DNA of 63,141 nucleotides, filler included, from Reticulomyxa filosa (lineage: Eukaryota; Protista; Foraminifera): the NCBI GenBank assembly GCA_000512085.1. It is 20 parts of 20 records of this genome, joined end to end, with 100 filler letters (N's around TTAATTAATTAA, not from the genome) between each part and the next. Parts side by side here need not be neighbours in the genome. Positions count along the whole stretch, not along the records: positions 13,481 to 19,654 come from ASPP01003787.1; 19 more parts are not named here. The stretch is one strand, 5' to 3'. A model generated the notes under the pieces. The model had not been told where the DNA came from, did not search any database, and saw nothing but the letters and a program-made list of their open reading frames with translations. This document shows, in pieces, positions 4,413 to 19,654 of the stretch. The stretch's first letter is position 1; every line of letters starts with the position of its first letter. Both the position numbers and the translations under genes were made by a program.

Positions 4413-5912
4413 TTAATCATCATTAGACACATCAATAGAGCGAGTATCATTGTTGTCAGCATAATCTTCCAACAGCTCGAGTGGATTGAATGCTACATCT
4501 TTGAGAACAGTGGCGATGGGCTGAACAACCTCAGAGTTCACTCCAGTGCGGGGAGTGTACTCAATAGTAGTAGTAGTAGTAGTAGTAGTAGTAGGCCGAG
4601 CAACTTCATTTATGATGTCTCTTTTGCTGATAATAGCTGGAGGGCTGGCATCGCCAGTGAGATCTTCCGTAGAAGATTCTGAGTGATGGTTGTTCTCATC
4701 TGCAGCATCCGGTGCACCAGTATTTTGTGTATTAGTATCAGCGGTGCTTTCATCCAAGTACTCTGTGGGATCAAACATAAATTGTTTTTTTTTCTGTTCT
4801 TTGGCTTTCAATAATTGTTCTTCTTCTTGTTTTTGATTTTTTTCTTTTTGAAGTTGTTCGTTAACATCATCAACAAATTTGCTCGCTTAAAATGTTGTAC
4901 ACGTTACGGATGCGTATGCATATGATACATATATTGTGTAATGTGTGTATACATTGCTATTGATCATATCATTTATTTTGATAGGAAAAAACAAAACAAA
5001 ACAAAATTGGGCTTTTTGCAAGATGAGTTGATTTTTTGAGGATCGAATTGCTCTTCTTTATCAAACTTGATTTTCAATTCTCGAGGAGTTCGGACGTGGT
5101 CATGACTTCGAAATAAAATGGCCATGAGATTGAAGTCCATCCCACACTGTGATAAGCAATCGTAAAATTTGCATGTTTCCTCCTGAGTCCAGGGGCATTT
5201 TTTGTATTTGATCTGTTTCTTTGCAAAGCTTCGAGTGTTGACCAAAGGCGCGTCTTTGCGTAGCTCTTTGACGTCAACGATAATAGGTTTGACCGTAGCA
5301 TCGACAGTAACAGATGCGGGTGGATTTGTATCTGGAGCCTCAACACCCGTTTCTGCTACAGTTGCCGCAACTGCAACGACTTGCTTGGATTCTTCTCGCA
5401 AGTTTTGATCCAATCGCTTCCAAATGTCATGAAAGCGGCCTTTGCCACTTCGCAGACGATCTTTTCGAAGTTTGGTTTGGGAGGTCATGGCAATGGTGCC
5501 GTCTTGCTGCATCACTAGGAAATGCGATAATGGATTGACGAGCTTGTCTTGCAATGTGTTGGCACTCTCCTGATCATTTTGATCGTTCCCAAACGGATCC
5601 TTTACTGATCTCATGACAAGATGATCCCTGGTCAAGTGTGCGTGCTGTTGCTCTTTGTGATGTTGCAACTCTACTCGTGTCAAAAATGCAATCTTTTGTT
5701 CGCAATGAATACATTGATATCGATGGATCTTCATTTGATGCTGGTCACATTCATCCAATGTCAAAAACTCTTGTCGACACCAATGACAAGTATATGCTTC
5801 ACTTGCAACCTCTTTCTTCTCTTCTTTCTCTTCTGCTTCGTTTTTGTCTTCTTCTGCTTCGTTTTTGTCTTCTTCTTCTTCTTCTTCTTCTACTTCTTTT
5901 TCTTTTCTTTTT
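4413..5912 (-). CDS. BDP1: TFIIIB B''/Bdp1-like SANT (Myb) domain protein with two N-terminal C2H2 zinc fingers; 5'-partial, intron ~5010-4890
   Basis: PWTQEETCKFYDCLSQCGMDFNLMAILF..RTPRELKIKFDKEEQFDPQKIN matches the Bdp1 SANT pattern WxxEETxxFYxxLxxxGxDFxLxxxLF..RxRxxxKxKFxxEE. In-frame upstream are YTCHWCRQEFLTLDECDQHQMKIH (C-x2-C-x12-H-x4-H) and YQCIHCEQKIAFLTRVELQHHKEQQH. Confidence 0.75.
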
Positions 5913-13480: not shown

Positions 13481-14566
13481 CACTCAAAAACGAATACAAA
13501 TTTATCTGTGAGTATCCAAGTCATATTGAATTATATGGACACTGTGTAGTGAAATTGGTAGATAACGACAGCAAATACAGCAATCAAATTACTTTGTTGT
13601 CTTTTGGATCTGATTTGGAAGGAAAAAATAAACATACATTGTTGATGAAATATGTAAGTGTTTGGAGTAATATATCAAACAAATCAAATAAACTAAACAG
13701 TTACAATCAGTGGATTCCTTTCACAGACAATCACAATCATCCGATTATCATTGGAATAGAAAGAGATCAAGATAATTATATTGGAGTGCGTGCATTGACT
13801 GGTGGAAGCAAAAATCATTTGTTATTTATCATTTGTCTTGGTAATAATATTAGTGTGTTTGATTTAAATGCATTTCAATTTATTAAACATAATTTTTTAC
13901 CAGCTGGTGGTTATTATATTGAATATCCTTGCTTTGTATCAAACTTAGAAAATGGGCAAGAACAAGAAATGATAAAAACAAATAAACAAAATTGTCAAAT
14001 GTTATTTTTTTGTAGAAAGGCAGGATCGTTAATTGAATATGATGAAGATAAAAACATTTTTCGATTTTATCAACTACCTGTTTGTGATGATATTGCACTA
14101 TTCAATGCATATGCATATGTGTGTATCAATGATGTCATTTTGTTCTTTGGTGGATCAAATTACCCTGATATTTCAAGATCAGTGTACAAGTATTCAATAC
14201 GAGAAAAAAAATGGGTGACATTTGAAAACATTTTACCCAATCTATTATATGATTGTGTTGCAATATTGAGTGAAGAAGACAATGATATATACATCATTGG
14301 AGGATTAGATAATAAAAAGAAAGCAGCATCAACTCACATGAAGACTAGATTACGTGTATGGGATCCTTCACAGTTGGTAATAATTTGCTTATGTATGTAT
14401 TTTAATAAAATCCATGTAAATTTTATTGAGTGACAAATAATAAATAATAAATATTGGACAGTCAAAAAATGAAATAAAATATATTATTCAACATTGGATT
14501 CGAATTTTAAAGATAAAATTAGGATGGATCGATGATTTTGATAAAATTATTATGAAATATAAATGA
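13481..14566 (+). CDS. Kelch-like beta-propeller protein (expanded family), 5'-partial; last exon 14462-14566 encodes the HWIR/LGW module
   Basis: Kelch-type GG motifs (ILFFGG, IYIIGG; SVYKYSIREKKW). Phase-0 intron 14377-14461 follows WDPSQL. The last exon reads SKNEIKYIIQHWIRILKIKLGWIDDFDKIIMKYK*. Paralog at 51268-52519. Confidence 0.85.
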
Positions 14567-15471
14567 AACAGATTTTGAAGAAGCAAAATTAAAATATTTG
14601 GTTAACCATGCTTTAGATATGATTTTGATTTTGATTTTATTTCATAATCATGAAATTTGGCAATTTTTTCGTATTATTTTCAAAATATATATAAAAAAGG
14701 TTAACAATTAAACAAATAATAAATTATCAGCCTTTACTTTATCTTTTGAGTTTTTCATTGCTTGCTGACAAGTTAAAAAAAGTCTTCAAATTCATATCCA
14801 CCCCCTTTTTCAGTTTGTAAGGTTAAAAAACGTTATCTTTTTTGGTGTAATTTTGTATTTTGGTTTTGCAATCCGAAAGAAAAAAAAGATGACTAGCATT
14901 TGGCCTAGTTCAACTTCGCAACAGCAAAAATAACAAGAAGTAATGAAAAAAACAAGAGATAGAAATACAAGTGTTATTAGAGCAAGTGGGTGATTGTTTC
15001 ATAGTGATTCGAAGAGTAACACACTTGAAAATGGCAGCAACGAATAGATACTAAAAGTTTGGAAATGTCAAATTTCACAATGGCACAATCGGTCAATCTT
15101 TTACAAATTAGTTTGAAAGATTGTCAAAATAAAAAAAAGAGGCTATACAATTAGCTCAAGCAAATTAACAAGTCTTGATTTAAAATTGAATCCGTTGGCA
15201 AAAAATTTAGACGAAATTGAAGAAATTAAAAAAAGAGTTGCTCCAATTCGTAATAATTTAATTCGATTGTAAAGAATGAATCAGTTGCATTAAATCCAGG
15301 ACCAAATTAAATTTCTACAAAAATAGGATTCATTTTTTTTATAGATTTTTATTGGAGTATTTTCAAAGAACATTACAAAATTTATTAATTTTTTTTCAGA
15401 TCCAATTTTTTCTCTTTCAATAAATTAAAAATAAAATATTACTCCATTTTTTTTTCTCACTCTTTTTCTTT

Positions 15472-15812
15472 TCATGAAAGATCATGTTGTTTTCCTAAAT
15501 TGCTACATAATGAAAATAACCACATTACATCCACATCCTCATCTGTAAAACCATTCATCATTATCATTGCTCTTTGAACTATTGCTGCTATATGTATTGG
15601 CTCTGCTGGTTTAGATTTATGTTCTGCACTATGTTTACCACAATCCCATCTCCAATTTTTAAATGGTCTGGAATGTCCATTTATACAACGTATATCTGCT
15701 TTTTCATTTATTTGTAATTGTTTTCCATCTTCTGTATGATACCAATATGAGTTTATACCATTTCCTTTGTCACACGCAGGCATTGAATTTTCAGCTTCTT
15801 CCAAGTTGTCAT
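15472..15812 (-). CDS. Small Cys/His-rich putative Zn-binding protein with a 1-nt frameshift near 15779
   Basis: ATG at 15812 gives MTTWKKLKIQC. Restoring one C (TGCCT to TGCCCT) joins it to PACDKGNGINSYWYH...INEKADIRCINGH...WRWDCGKH, giving a CPAC..WYH..RC..WRWDCxxH pattern. Confidence 0.55.
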
Positions 15813-17310
15813 CTTTTTTTTTTTTAGTGTGTTACAGTTTTATGTTGAAGCTCAGTTTATTACAAAAGATACAAATCAATTTTACTTTATTTTCTTTGCA
15901 ATTCTCAACTCTTCACAACTACAATAAAGCAAATAAACAAACAAAAAAAGGTGCTTCATAAAATTTTTGATATTAGTTTTTATGAAATATGTCTTTACAA
16001 TATTAATCAGAAAAATTGGAAGTGAAAAAGGTTTATTAATTTGATAATTTGTACAAAATGAAATACGGAAAAAATATTGCTTTCAATAGAAGACAAGTCA
16101 ATTAAATCAAAAAACAAATAACAACAAAAAGATGAGAAAACGAGAATTGTTGTTTTTTTAAAGAAAAATTTGAAAAAAAGGATAAATTTACAATTTTGTG
16201 TAATAATAATGATAATATTTGAAAGAAGAAAATGAGTTTGTTTATTGCGACAACACTGTATTGTTTTTATTGAGATGCAGAGGGATTTTCCAATACCGAA
16301 CCACCAACACAAAATATGGCTTGTGTCAACAGAGTATAAAAAAGAAACAAAGAATATGCACTCATTTTTATTACCACTGTTATCATTTCAAAATTCTAAA
16401 TATAATTTCCATCATCTTTATTGATCAAATGTAATTGTTTATTGAATTGAATATGTTGTTTTAAATGGATTTTGTACTTTATTGTCAAAATTGAATTGTT
16501 GTTATACACCAGAATGTATTTCATAATAACAACTTCTTTTGTTTTTTGCTTAAGATCGTTTTTGAAGATATAAAATGGAAGCTGATCGAATCTTTTTTCC
16601 ATCAAGAGCAACGAAAGGGATTGTCAAAATATTTTGGCAATATAAAAAATGGAGTTTAGCAACACATGTGATTTTCTTTTCAGTGAAGAAATAAATTTTT
16701 TTAAAAAGAATTTATCCAAACATTAAAACTGCGTAAATCATCAAATGCCATGTAATTGCATAAATTACATAAACTGTACCTTTTCATCAATTAATTTGAA
16801 ATAGTTTAATAAATTTGTACAGTCCTTCTGTTTTTGATTTAATAAAACTTGGAAGAAAAAGGAATTTTTTGTTTTGTAATAAAAGGCAACTTGCTTGCAT
16901 TAAGTATAATCCATTGCTTGTTTTATTCAAAGCAATACGATTTTTCAAATATATTATTGAGGCACTTTTGAGAGATTGGATGAACAATGCAACATTGTGA
17001 TAAATCATTACCACCTTTTTCTTGCATTATTTGCAAAAAAAGTAATTTTGAAGACAGCTCTTGTTATAAAAAAAATTTTTAAAACCAATGAAAAAACTTG
17101 AACAAAAAATGACTCTAAATTCAATAATCCAGTCTGGAAATTAATGAGAATTGTTTGAAATGAGTTTTCAAAGAAAATAACAACATTCAAATTATCCATT
17201 TCCTATCATTTTGAGTAAACTAGAATTAAAACAAAAAATTCTTGCCGATTCCAAAAGTTTATTTTATTTGACAGAGAATAAATTTATTTCAATTTTTTAT
17301 TGACACTTCA

Positions 17311-17709
17311 TGAGCTTAAAAAAAAAGTTGAAGAGCATCTTTTTCGTCATCTTTGCATCATCAAAGAGCATCTCAAGGAAAAGAAAAGGAGATACGTGAA
17401 CAAATTCAAGTGTTCAATGGACATCATGACTGGGTGCATGCTGTTGAATATTCACCATTTGTGATAAAGGATAGTACTGGTAGTTCAAATGTGATATGTT
17501 CTGGATCAGATGATAATACAATTCGATTTTGGGATATTCGATCAAATAAGGATCAATTGTATGTCATTGAAGGAGATGAGAACGAAGATGATGGAATATT
17601 CTGTCTTAAATTTATTGTATTGAAAAAGAAGGATCAAACTAAGAATGTTACACATGATTTGAATTTGCGTTATGGTTCATACAACGGTCTCATTCGTATT
17701 TGGGGATAA
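17311..17709 (+). pseudogene. Internally deleted WD40-family copy: 5' flank fused to the last repeat and C-terminus
   Basis: QIQVFNGH..VHAVEYSPFV...NVICSGSDDNTIRFWDIRSNK...YGSYNGLIRIWG* is collinear with the end of the 54361-55693 gene. The upstream sequence 17315-17380 matches that gene's 5' flank (55725-55790, reverse complement). Confidence 0.8.
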
Positions 17710-19104
17710 TTATTTTTTGTCGAATAAGAAATAAAAGTATTTTTTGTTTGAAAAGTTTGATAAAAAGAAAAGAAAGGTTATATTAAACTTGTTTAATTTG
17801 ATTGAATGTAAGCATTTAAAGATGTCTTCTATCTTACTTTGTTATTTAAAAAATTTAAAAAGTTACACGAAATGTTTTTTAAAAATTCAAAGACATTACA
17901 AATGAAAATGGTATCCAAATCGCAAGATATTTTAGGTATTGCGTTTTCTTCATTGCAAATCACTACTAATTTTTTTTGTATAGTATCAAACACTCAAAAC
18001 AGCATGTAAAATAACAAAAACATTATCTTAAACAATAATTTAAGAAACAACAAGTTTAATTTGGTGAGCAATTGATGGTCCTTGCTATAACTACATTTAA
18101 TACAATGATGAAGGTGTATAAAAAGAAGAGATTTCAGATAAGTATTACATTATCTTCATTTAATGATTGCTGTTTGAAGAACAAATGAGATAAAAACATT
18201 AAACTATTCACAGAAATAAGAAATATTTATCCCAATAGATAAAATAATATGTACAAAGGTTAATCAGGTTTTTTAAAAGCAAACAAAGTGCATTAAATTA
18301 AGTTCCAAAATTAGATTTGAGCAATAATATTAATTGAAAATAAAGATTTTGAAAAAATATTTTCTAAAAATCTGTTTACATTCATTCCTTATGTTTTTGG
18401 CAACAAGATATTTTTAATGAAGAAAAAAATAATAAATCAAACAAGCATTTTTGACTTAATTAATTGTTCAATTTCAGTAAGTTGATCATCCTAGCTAATG
18501 AGGTATTTAAATGCTCATTCATGTCTTTTATTTTCCCGCTAAAATTACATATTATAGCCATGATCTATATGTCCGTTTTTCTTCACTTCTTCCAATTGTT
18601 TCAAATCTTAACGAAATTGTCTTTGACATATGATATTCAGTTCATTAATTTGTTTTTGAGTTGTTTTTACTTTAATACGTGGAATTGTAACACTCAATTT
18701 CTGTCAAAGTATTGCTAGCCAAAAAAAAATAGAGTTACTCCAGTTTCAACAGTCCTTGTTTTTTATTCCAGTATTTGGCCTCAACTTTACTCATGTTCAC
18801 CTTCTTTACTCTCGACTTGTCAAATTTTTATGAATGGTATATCCTTTATTTTCGCCAACTTGCTCGCAGGATCACATTTTTTTATTACACAAAAATTTTT
18901 TTCTGTACAAGACAAGGTTTCGTGATGTATGATGAAATTTTACCAACAACTGTGCAGTCACATATTTTTTTAAATAATAATTTTTTTGAATATTATTGAT
19001 CTATTGAATGCAGTTGACGAAATTGAAAAACAAAGTGAATAAGATAAAAATTTCATTTAAAAGGATCACAAAAAATTTACATTTTTTATATGTATAAATC
19101 TTAA

Positions 19105-19654
19105 TCATCCCCAAATTCGAATATTACAATCTGTAGAACCTGATGCAATTATATTTCCATTTGGAGAAATGTCCACGCATCTCACACAATTAGAATGTCC
19201 TTTCAACATTTGTATTTCCTTTCCTGACTCTACATCCCACAATCGAATTGTATTATCACTTGAACACGATACAATTGTTTGGCCATCTGGAAAATATTTT
19301 GCATCATATACTTGATTTGTATGTCCTTCAAATATTTTCCATTCTCTTCCCGTTTCAATACTCCATATTCGAATTGTATTATCCAATGAACAGGATACAA
19401 TAAACTTACCATCTGGAGAAAATTTTGCACGTGTTACATAATCAGAATGTCCTTCAAATTGTTTTAATATTTTACCTGATTCTACATTCCACAAATTAAT
19501 TGTTTTATCATTTGATGATGATACAATCATTTTACCATCTGATGAAAATTGTGTGCTTATTATGTCTTTTGAATGTCCTAATAATAATTTCATTTCTATT
19601 CCAGAATGTACATCCCATAATTGTATTATACAATCTCGTGAGCATGATGCAATA
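19105..19654 (-). CDS. WD40-repeat protein, C-terminal part (G-beta-like repeats)
   Basis: Four to five GH...FSPDG..IVSCS.D.TIR.W repeats ending in CNIRIWG*. Open to the contig edge. Confidence 0.9.

What the first reader, a model, noticed from the sequence alone, without database searches (positions are those of the whole stretch)
14462..14566. Unnamed ~34-aa box at the C-terminus of Kelch propellers: candidate cullin-adaptor (SOCS/BC-box or F-box-like) motif
Seen: both Kelch genes end in a separate phase-0 exon, SKNEIKYIIQHWIRILKIKLGWIDDFDKIIMKYK (14462-14566) and SRFVIEHWVRILKIKLGWIDNFDQIIFKYSR (51268-51363, minus). The ORF track misses these exons. Known: beta-propeller plus short helical box is the design of cullin-RING substrate receptors (F-box-WD40/Kelch, WSB, KLHDC). 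Inference: IIQHWIRIL resembles the BC box SLQHLCRL, and WIDDFDKIIMKY has the spacing of F-box helix 1 LPDEILLEILSY. This may be a lineage-specific box that couples many variable propellers to one E3 scaffold.
Basis: partly seen in the sequence, partly recalled or inferred. Interest (0 to 1): 0.8.

Follow-up and report, generated by a model that had tools for sequence, protein, structure and literature searches.

The report
Shared helical box joining foram propellers
The small terminal exon is real and encodes a 33-residue helical module, seen only in the foraminiferan Reticulomyxa filosa, that sits after Kelch propellers, before WD40 propellers or between the two in over 200 distinct proteins. 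It looks like a new protein-docking or pairing motif, but it shows none of the tested sequence hallmarks of the F-box or SOCS/BC-box it was proposed to be.

Summary
The piece is a 6174-bp Reticulomyxa filosa contig. A Kelch ORF (13483-14376, cut at the 5' contig end) is followed by an 85-nt phase-0 GT..AG intron (14377-14461). A terminal exon (14462-14566) then encodes the 34-aa box plus TGA. The deposited gene model (RFI_04136) misses this exon.

The box is not a Kelch-specific tail. A profile of it finds 198 representative proteins, and all 30 looked up are R. filosa. Among 211 instances:
- 57 are Kelch-box-end.
- 13 are Kelch-box-WD40.
- 81 are box-WD40 with no Kelch detected upstream.

In four genes read at DNA level, the box is a discrete 33-codon exon flanked by phase-0 introns in three. 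In the fourth the upstream intron is missing.

AlphaFold2 predicts two amphipathic helices at low confidence (pLDDT below 50-68) that are packed on neither propeller. Pfam and PDB sequence searches give no significant match and a protein-atlas feature search gave no usable hit. The BC-box pattern occurs in 1 of 211 instances and the F-box LPxE start in 0 of 211.

Best reading: a new, lineage-specific interaction module for propellers. I favour LisH-like self-pairing (about 0.4). Docking to a shared adaptor such as an E3 scaffold is the main rival (about 0.25). The function is untested.

The parts
13483..14376 (+). Kelch propeller exon (298 codons). It is cut at its 5' end by the start of the contig, with about 44 N-terminal residues missing.
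   Evidence: Open frame. Pfam Kelch_1/2/6 hits. 55-70% identity to more than 350 R. filosa Kelch paralogues.
14377..14461 (+). Phase-0 GT..AG intron, 85 nt.
   Evidence: Sequence. An intron sits at the same position in L001, L002 and L004.
14462..14563 (+). Box exon: the 33-residue helix-loop-helix module plus one extra Lys codon.
   Evidence: 72.5 bits against a profile built without it. 62-91% identity to 52 paralogous boxes. Helices predicted in paralogues. Both helices are strongly amphipathic.
14564..14566 (+). TGA stop. It stands where Kelch-box-WD40 genes have a splice donor after the terminal Lys-Tyr.
14567..14690 (+). 3' flank conserved among Kelch-only paralogues. It is non-coding, because the equivalent stretch in L001 contains stops.
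   Evidence: alignment A4.
19105..19654 (-). C-terminal part (182 residues, about four WD repeats) of a WD40 gene of the family that carries the same box. It is 71% identical to the WD40 half of the Kelch-box-WD40 protein P0139. It is cut by the contig end, so its own box, if any, is off the piece.

Best explanation
The exon encodes a self-contained 33-residue helix-loop-helix protein-interaction module restricted, as far as sampled, to Reticulomyxa filosa.

Shown:
- In three of the four WD40-linked genes read at DNA level it is carried by a symmetric 33-codon phase 0-0 exon. In the fourth the upstream intron is missing.
- It occurs in three architectures: Kelch-box (this gene, where the exon runs one codon further into a stop), box-WD40 behind a 14-16-residue leader, and Kelch-box-WD40.
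- It is not predicted to pack on either propeller.
- Its conserved positions are mostly hydrophobic or aromatic (W12, G21, W22, I23, F26, Y33) plus R14, arranged on two amphipathic helices.

Inferred: the module folds only on binding a partner. The most likely partner is another copy of the box, giving a LisH-like four-helix pairing. That would dimerise these proteins and could pair separate Kelch-box and box-WD40 proteins into the two-propeller assembly that the fused genes make in one chain.
For: - Architecture census: 57 Kelch-box-end, 13 Kelch-box-WD40 and 81 box-WD40 among 211 instances.
- Discrete 33-codon phase 0-0 exon in L004, L005 and L007. No Kelch lies within 2-4 kb upstream of three box-WD40 genes.
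- The existence of fused and split forms argues that the split forms work together (inference).
- AlphaFold2: propellers at pLDDT 90-98, the box below 50 in the two-propeller model and 57-68 in the Kelch-only model, with helices at box positions 2-15 and 23-30 and pTM 0.65.
- Helical hydrophobic moments are 0.62 and 0.66, reached by 2.5% of shuffles. 52% of residues are hydrophobic, too many for a free 33-residue hairpin.
- In divergent pairs the box is more conserved than the adjoining propeller: 0.62 vs 0.41 for Kelch and 0.49 vs 0.32 for WD40.
- In divergent Kelch-box-WD40 proteins a 40-55-residue Glu/Lys-rich stretch, coiled-coil-like by eye, precedes the box.
- In P0228 the box stands between a TRAF-type zinc finger and WD40, where TRAF7 has its oligomerising coiled coil. 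The TRAF7 layout is from my own knowledge.
Against: - No oligomer prediction or experiment could be run.
- Pfam LisH did not match at E 10, and no LisH protein appeared in the PDB profile search.
- The fused proteins have only one box, so a box-box contact is not needed to join their two propellers.
- Very large families of variable propellers with one constant small box are the classic signature of E3 substrate receptors.
- Low pLDDT fits any bind-to-fold partner, not specifically self-association.
- The WD40 identities may be lowered by repeat-register slips in the alignment.
Confidence: 0.4

Rival explanations
1. Adaptor-docking box. The module anchors hundreds of interchangeable Kelch and WD40 propellers to one common scaffold. 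It would be functionally equivalent to an F-box, a SOCS/BC box, or the helix-loop-helix (H-box) that ties DCAF WD40 receptors to DDB1.
For: - One constant box accompanies very many divergent propellers.
- It sits at a protein terminus in most cases.
- A helix-loop-helix directly N-terminal of a WD40 propeller is the DCAF layout (own knowledge; position).
- The only structural rows whose alignment extends into the tail helix are Kelch receptors with a C-terminal Elongin-binding helix, KLHDC10/3/2-EloB/C.
- The box is not packed on the propeller.
Against: - BC-box pattern in 1 of 211 instances and LPxE in 0 of 211. 190 of 206 boxes are proline-free, so there is no Cul-box.
- No F-box, SOCS_box or VHL family hit at E 10, and no such protein in the PDB profile search.
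- The KLHDC overlays of the tail have rmsd 4.4-7.2 A on a low-confidence segment.
- In Kelch-box-WD40 proteins the box is wedged between two propellers with only 3-4 spare residues. That is awkward, though not impossible, for insertion into an adaptor pocket.
- P0228 already carries a TRAF-type zinc finger upstream of the box.
Confidence: 0.25
2. Structural linker or cap. The box is simply the conserved N-terminal extension of this WD40 family, acting as an inter-propeller hinge comparable to the HELP motif of EML proteins. In Kelch-only genes it is retained after the WD40 half was lost.
For: - Box-WD40 is the most frequent context, with the first WD repeat starting 3-4 residues after the box.
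- In Kelch-only genes the stop sits where the fused genes have a splice donor. One Kelch-only 3' flank resembles the intron of a fused gene over about 20 nt.
Against: - AlphaFold2 places it on neither propeller, at pLDDT below 50, although both propellers are modelled at 92-98 from an alignment in which every row has the box.
- It remains conserved in at least 57 Kelch-only proteins that have no WD40 in cis.
Confidence: 0.15
3. Membrane- or cytoskeleton-targeting amphipathic helices. The Trp/Lys/Arg-rich box lies in-plane on a membrane or binds a filament, localising the propellers.
For: - High hydrophobic moments, two invariant Trp and net charge +4.
- Some family members start with Met-Gly-Asn, a possible N-myristoylation start.
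Against: There is no direct evidence. The acidic cluster at positions 24, 25 and 27 is conserved. The myristoylation-type start is present only in a subset of members.
Confidence: 0.05

Closest known systems
LisH motif (LIS1, TBL1, muskelin, TOPLESS)
   Same: About 33 residues and two short helices. It is found next to both WD40 and Kelch propellers, at a terminus or between domains. The hydrophobic stripes and a Gly-aromatic turn fall at comparable spacing, a comparison made from memory only. LisH acts by dimerising through a four-helix bundle.
   Different: No Pfam LisH match at E 10 and no LisH protein in the PDB profile search. The two Trp and the Arg are not LisH features. Dimerisation was not tested.
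SOCS/BC box of CRL2/5 receptors, including the KLHDC2/3/10 Kelch receptors
   Same: A six-bladed Kelch propeller is followed by a C-terminal helix. KLHDC-EloB/C chains are the only structural matches whose alignment runs into the tail.
   Different: The BC-box consensus and the Cul-box are absent, and there is no Pfam match. The same box is mostly N-terminal of WD40. The tail overlays have rmsd 4.4-7.2 A.
F-box of F-box/WD40 and F-box/Kelch proteins
   Same: A small helical box adjoining WD40 or Kelch propellers in a very large, divergent family.
   Different: It has 33 residues and two helices, against about 45 residues and three helices. There is no LPxE start (0 of 211) and no Pfam F-box or F-box-like hit.
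Helix-loop-helix / H-box of DCAF receptors (DDB2, CSA) that binds DDB1
   Same: A helix-loop-helix placed directly N-terminal of a WD40 propeller, not part of the propeller fold.
   Different: The H-box has no usable sequence consensus, so homology cannot be tested here. No DCAF is known to me with the element C-terminal of a Kelch propeller.
TRAF7-type architecture (RING, TRAF zinc finger, coiled coil, WD40)
   Same: P0228 has a TRAF-type zinc finger, then the box, then WD40. The box occupies the place of the oligomerising coiled coil.
   Different: This is a single example. The zf-TRAF score (24.8 bits) is just under Pfam's cut-off of 27.

Membership tests
SOCS / BC box | BC-box consensus [STPA]-L-x3-[CSA]-x3-[ILVMA] | tested here: not met
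   The pattern was found in 1 of 211 box instances, searched with 6 upstream residues included.
SOCS / BC box | Proline-containing Cul2 or Cul5 box downstream of the BC helix | tested here: not met
   190 of 206 unique boxes contain no Pro. Kelch-only proteins end 1-5 residues after the box.
SOCS / BC box | Match to Pfam SOCS_box or a related model | tested here: not met
   No such hit for any of 53 boxes at E up to 10, although HMMER filters drop very weak matches.
SOCS / BC box | Binds Elongin B/C | not testable with these tools
   No complex prediction was available.
F-box | Match to Pfam F-box or F-box-like | tested here: not met
   No hit at E up to 10 for 53 boxes or for the 41-residue tail.
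F-box | About 40-50 residues, three helices, conserved Leu-Pro start | tested here: not met
   The conserved unit is a 33-codon exon with two predicted helices. LPxE occurs in 0 of 211 instances.
F-box | Binds Skp1 | not testable with these tools
   No complex prediction was available.
LisH | Match to Pfam LisH (PF08513) | tested here: not met
   No hit at E up to 10. No LisH protein among PDB profile hits at E up to 10.
LisH | About 33 residues forming two helices | tested here: inconclusive
   The length is met (33 codons). Two helices are predicted, but at pLDDT below 50-68.
LisH | Homodimerises as a four-helix bundle | not testable with these tools
DCAF helix-loop-helix (DDB1 anchor) | Helix-loop-helix immediately N-terminal of the WD40 propeller and outside its fold | tested here: met
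   81 box-WD40 instances. The first WD repeat starts 3-4 residues after the box, and the box is not packed on the propeller.
DCAF helix-loop-helix (DDB1 anchor) | Binds the DDB1 BPA-BPC cleft | not testable with these tools
   No complex prediction was available, and no sequence consensus exists to test.
Kelch beta-propeller | Six-bladed Kelch fold and Pfam Kelch repeats (upstream exon) | tested here: met
   Kelch_1 E 1.2e-7 on the window exon. The paralogue model aligns to the NS1-BP Kelch domain at Z 28.4, rmsd 2.2 A, 258 residues.

The most novel reading that the evidence does not exclude
The box is the docking element of a foraminiferan-specific ubiquitin-ligase (or other) scaffold. Several hundred Kelch and WD40 propellers would then be interchangeable substrate receptors. 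That would be an independently evolved equivalent of the F-box or SOCS box, spread through the genome by shuffling of one 99-nt phase 0-0 exon.
Probability: 0.2. Interest if true: 0.8.

Novelty: new variant of a known kind. Interest (0 to 1): 0.5.

Why it matters
Short helical boxes next to beta-propellers (F-box, SOCS box, LisH, DCAF helix-loop-helix) organise large parts of eukaryotic ubiquitylation and scaffold biology. All were defined in animals, fungi and plants.

Here an undescribed box of the same general kind marks over 200 distinct proteins in a rhizarian and is carried by a single symmetric mini-exon. It links two of that genome's largest gene families, Kelch and WD40.

Identifying its partner would show what these expansions are for. 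It would also give a clean example of exon shuffling of an interaction module outside the well-studied lineages. In practice, the profile would correct many gene models in the R. filosa annotation, where about 35 of the 120 listed Kelch paralogue models and the deposited model at this locus miss the exon.

Tried and rejected
- RNA support for the splice: no RNA run was listed.
- Pfam on the exon, on a 41-residue tail and on all 53 aligned boxes at E up to 10: one stray hit only, Rec114 in one member.
- PDB sequence profile search at E up to 10: only chance-level hits to rBAT and P2X3.
- Protein-atlas feature search with the box: no usable hit.
- Literature: no paper holds both 'Reticulomyxa filosa' and 'Kelch'. 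The papers that mention WD40 are unrelated. The genome paper is not held.
- A WD40 remnant directly downstream of the box exon in the window: none found by tblastn. The window gene therefore really ends at the box.
- A hidden Kelch exon upstream of three box-WD40 genes: none within 2-4 kb.
- Further partner domains upstream of the box in 20 proteins: only zf-TRAF (P0228), a weak NACHT (P0261) and a weak TPR (P0244).
- My first, looser census counted 27 Kelch-box-WD40 proteins. A stricter criterion gives 13, and I use that figure.
- Within the close Kelch-only subfamily the box is only about as conserved as the propeller (0.70 vs 0.67). I therefore dropped the claim that it is much more conserved there. 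The difference appears only in divergent pairs.
- The two window exons were never joined. They were searched separately by reference. The deposited full-length paralogues P0038 and P0139 (residues 320-990) were folded in place of a spliced window model.

Full report
**What is at the coordinates**

The piece 13481-19654 has about 27% G+C. It is a complete 6174-bp contig of the freshwater foraminiferan Reticulomyxa filosa: the 100%-identical database protein RFI_04136 (P0001) sits on a single 6174-bp contig.

- A frame opened at 13483 runs off the 5' edge and ends with Gln-Leu at 14371-14376.
- GT follows at 14377 and AG ends at 14461, giving an 85-nt phase-0 intron.
- The upstream exon is a Kelch propeller (Pfam Kelch_1 E 1.2e-7).
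- The mechanical ORF list lacks the small exon. The deposited model also skips it and splices into the 3' flank.

They were searched separately by reference, and deposited full-length paralogues were used for folding.

**Is the exon real?**

At least 351 R. filosa proteins match the Kelch exon.

- Of the 120 listed, 61 end with, or contain, the same box spliced at the same codon. About 35 read through the intron.
- Two read-through models were checked at DNA level (L001, L002). Both have the exon behind a GT..AG intron at the same place.
- A profile built from 52 paralogous boxes without the window's copy scores the window exon at 72.5 bits. It finds nothing else in the six frames of the piece.
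- No RNA run was listed, so the splice rests on comparative evidence.

**The box is not a Kelch tail but a shared module**

A profile of the box was run against 1.84 billion representative proteins. It finds 198 proteins at E up to 1e-3 and 44 at E up to 1e-10. All 30 that I looked up, spread over the whole score range, are R. filosa.

In most of these hits the box lies directly in front of WD40 repeats, and in some it lies between a Kelch and a WD40 propeller. A strict census of 211 instances in the 267 proteins fetched gives:

| Architecture | Instances |
|---|---|
| Kelch-box-end | 57 |
| Kelch-box followed by unassigned read-through tail | 21 |
| Kelch-box-WD40 | 13 |
| box-WD40 without upstream Kelch | 81 |
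| fragments | 39 |

Three box-WD40 loci have no Kelch coding sequence within 2-4 kb upstream. Single examples put a TRAF-type zinc finger (P0228, E 3.7e-5) or a weak NACHT-like region (P0261, E 4e-3) upstream of the box.

**Gene structure**

- Kelch-box-WD40 gene of P0139 (L004): the box is a discrete 33-codon exon (4670-4768) with phase-0 GT..AG introns on both sides.
- Box-WD40 genes of P0193 (L005) and P0162 (L007): a 14-16-codon first exon is followed by the same 33-codon phase 0-0 exon and then the WD40 exon.
- P0226's gene (L003): the upstream intron is missing and the downstream one is kept. The deposited model misreads that downstream intron.
- The window: the exon runs one codon past the terminal Lys-Tyr into TGA, at the position where the other genes have a splice donor. 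No WD40 remnant follows it.

The module is therefore a symmetric mini-exon. This is the form expected for exon shuffling.

**Properties of the box**

Among 206 unique instances the most conserved positions are W22 (99%), W12 (97%), G21 (96%), I23 (94%), F26 (93%), R14 (91%) and Y33 (91%).

Conservation relative to the adjoining propeller:

| Comparison | Box identity | Propeller identity |
|---|---|---|
| Close Kelch-only subfamily | 0.70 | 0.67 |
| Divergent Kelch pairs | 0.62 | 0.41 |
| Divergent WD40 pairs | 0.49 | 0.32 |

Mean box identity between Kelch-only and WD40-only proteins is 0.52.

AlphaFold2 was run on two deposited proteins:

| Protein modelled | Propeller pLDDT | Box or tail prediction |
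|---|---|---|
| P0038 (Kelch-box), 48-row alignment | about 90 | One helix at pLDDT 57-68, then coil below 50 |
| P0139 residues 320-990 (Kelch-box-WD40), 88-row alignment | about 92 (Kelch) and 98 (WD40) | Two helices at box positions 2-15 and 23-30, pLDDT below 50; pTM 0.65 |

The box is therefore not modelled as part of either propeller.

Both helices are strongly amphipathic, with hydrophobic moments of 0.62 and 0.66 that 2.5% of shuffles reach. 52% of the residues are hydrophobic. A hairpin of this size cannot bury that much surface alone, so I infer that it folds on a partner.

- Pfam gives no F-box, SOCS_box, VHL or LisH hit for any of 53 boxes at E up to 10.
- A PDB sequence-profile search gives only chance-level hits.
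- The feature search of the protein atlas gives nothing usable.
- The BC-box pattern is present in 1 of 211 instances and the F-box LPxE start in none. 190 of 206 boxes have no proline, so there is no Cul-box.
- Structurally, the propeller is an ordinary six-bladed Kelch (NS1-BP Kelch domain: Z 28.4, rmsd 2.2 A, 258 residues aligned).
- The KLHDC10/3/2-Elongin B/C chains rank among the top hits and are the only rows that extend into the tail helix. They do so at rmsd 4.4-7.2 A on a low-confidence segment. That is a topological analogy and no more.

The general idea of a lineage-specific box shared by many variable propellers holds. The specific assignment to cullin-adaptor boxes has no support, and the 'C-terminus of Kelch' framing is too narrow.

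**Mechanism**

I commit to a bind-to-fold interaction module. I favour self-association, at about 0.4, for these reasons:

- It has the size and two-helix form of LisH, which also accompanies both WD40 and Kelch propellers (my own knowledge).
- Fused Kelch-box-WD40 genes exist alongside split Kelch-box and box-WD40 genes.
- Divergent fused proteins have a Glu/Lys-rich, coiled-coil-like stretch just before the box.
- In P0228 the box occupies the place of TRAF7's coiled coil (the TRAF7 layout is from my own knowledge).

The main rival, at about 0.25, is docking to a common adaptor. This would include a DCAF-like helix-loop-helix anchor to DDB1, and it fits the 'one constant box, hundreds of variable propellers' pattern. 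A purely structural linker (0.15) is disfavoured by the models and by conservation in proteins that lack a WD40. A membrane- or filament-targeting helix (0.05) has no direct support.

None of these could be tested directly.

**Novelty**

I found no name, family or paper for this box. It is a new short helical module of a familiar general kind, restricted as far as sampled to one foraminiferan, and present in over 200 distinct proteins.

Noticed in passing
window 13481-14711 (+): The deposited model RFI_04136 (P0001) is wrong at both ends. Its start is an internal ATG forced by the contig edge. Its 3' end reads into the intron and then splices into the 3' flank, skipping the box exon.
   Followed up: yes
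window 14567-14690; L001 11284-11400; L002 5130-5250: The 3' flank after the stop is conserved among Kelch-only paralogues whose proteins are only about 65% identical. It contains stops in L001, so it is non-coding, possibly a regulatory 3' UTR element. About 20 nt of the L001 flank resemble the start of the intron that follows the box in the fused gene on L004.
   Followed up: partly
window 17353-17709 (+): A 118-aa ORF holds only the last two or so repeats of a second WD40 subfamily (63% identical to P0121 residues 313-393). tblastn found no upstream WD40 exons or box on this strand. It is probably a gene fragment or pseudogene.
   Followed up: partly
window 19105-19654 (-): This is the C-terminal part of a WD40 gene, 71% identical to the WD40 part of the Kelch-box-WD40 protein P0139. 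The gene is cut by the contig end, so whether it has its own box or Kelch part cannot be seen.
   Followed up: partly
window 15472-15804 (-): A 110-aa ORF in a slightly more G+C-rich, C-skewed stretch. It has no Pfam hit and no usable atlas hit, and its coding status is unknown.
   Followed up: partly
L003 2214-2292 (gene of P0226): The deposited protein P0226 reads through the intron that follows the box, giving a run of Ile-Tyr repeats. This gene also lacks the intron upstream of the box, and its box is four residues shorter at the start.
   Followed up: yes
P0228 (252 aa) and P0261 (306 aa): Other upstream partners of the box. P0228 has a Cys/His-rich region with a TRAF-type zinc finger (24.8 bits, cut-off 27), then the box, then WD40, which is a TRAF7-like layout. 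P0261 has a weak NACHT-like region (17.4 bits) running into a partial box.
   Followed up: partly
P0180, P0218, P0266, P0267, P0121 (residues just before the box): Divergent Kelch-box-WD40 proteins carry a 40-55-residue Glu/Lys/Gln-rich stretch, coiled-coil-like by eye, between the Kelch propeller and the box. Some Kelch models (P0071, P0080, P0087, P0106) end inside such a stretch.
   Followed up: no
N-termini of P0004, P0005, P0016, P0226, P0159 and others: A subset of Kelch and box-WD40 proteins starts with Met-Gly-Asn followed by Ser/Thr-rich residues, a possible N-myristoylation signal. Others start with Met-Ser-Asn.
   Followed up: no
L002 3883-4896 (+) and 6010-6717 (-); L002 1-350 and 1024-1296: Kelch and WD40 paralogues and fragments lie clustered on the same short contigs in both orientations. 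This suggests local duplication and decay of these families.
   Followed up: no
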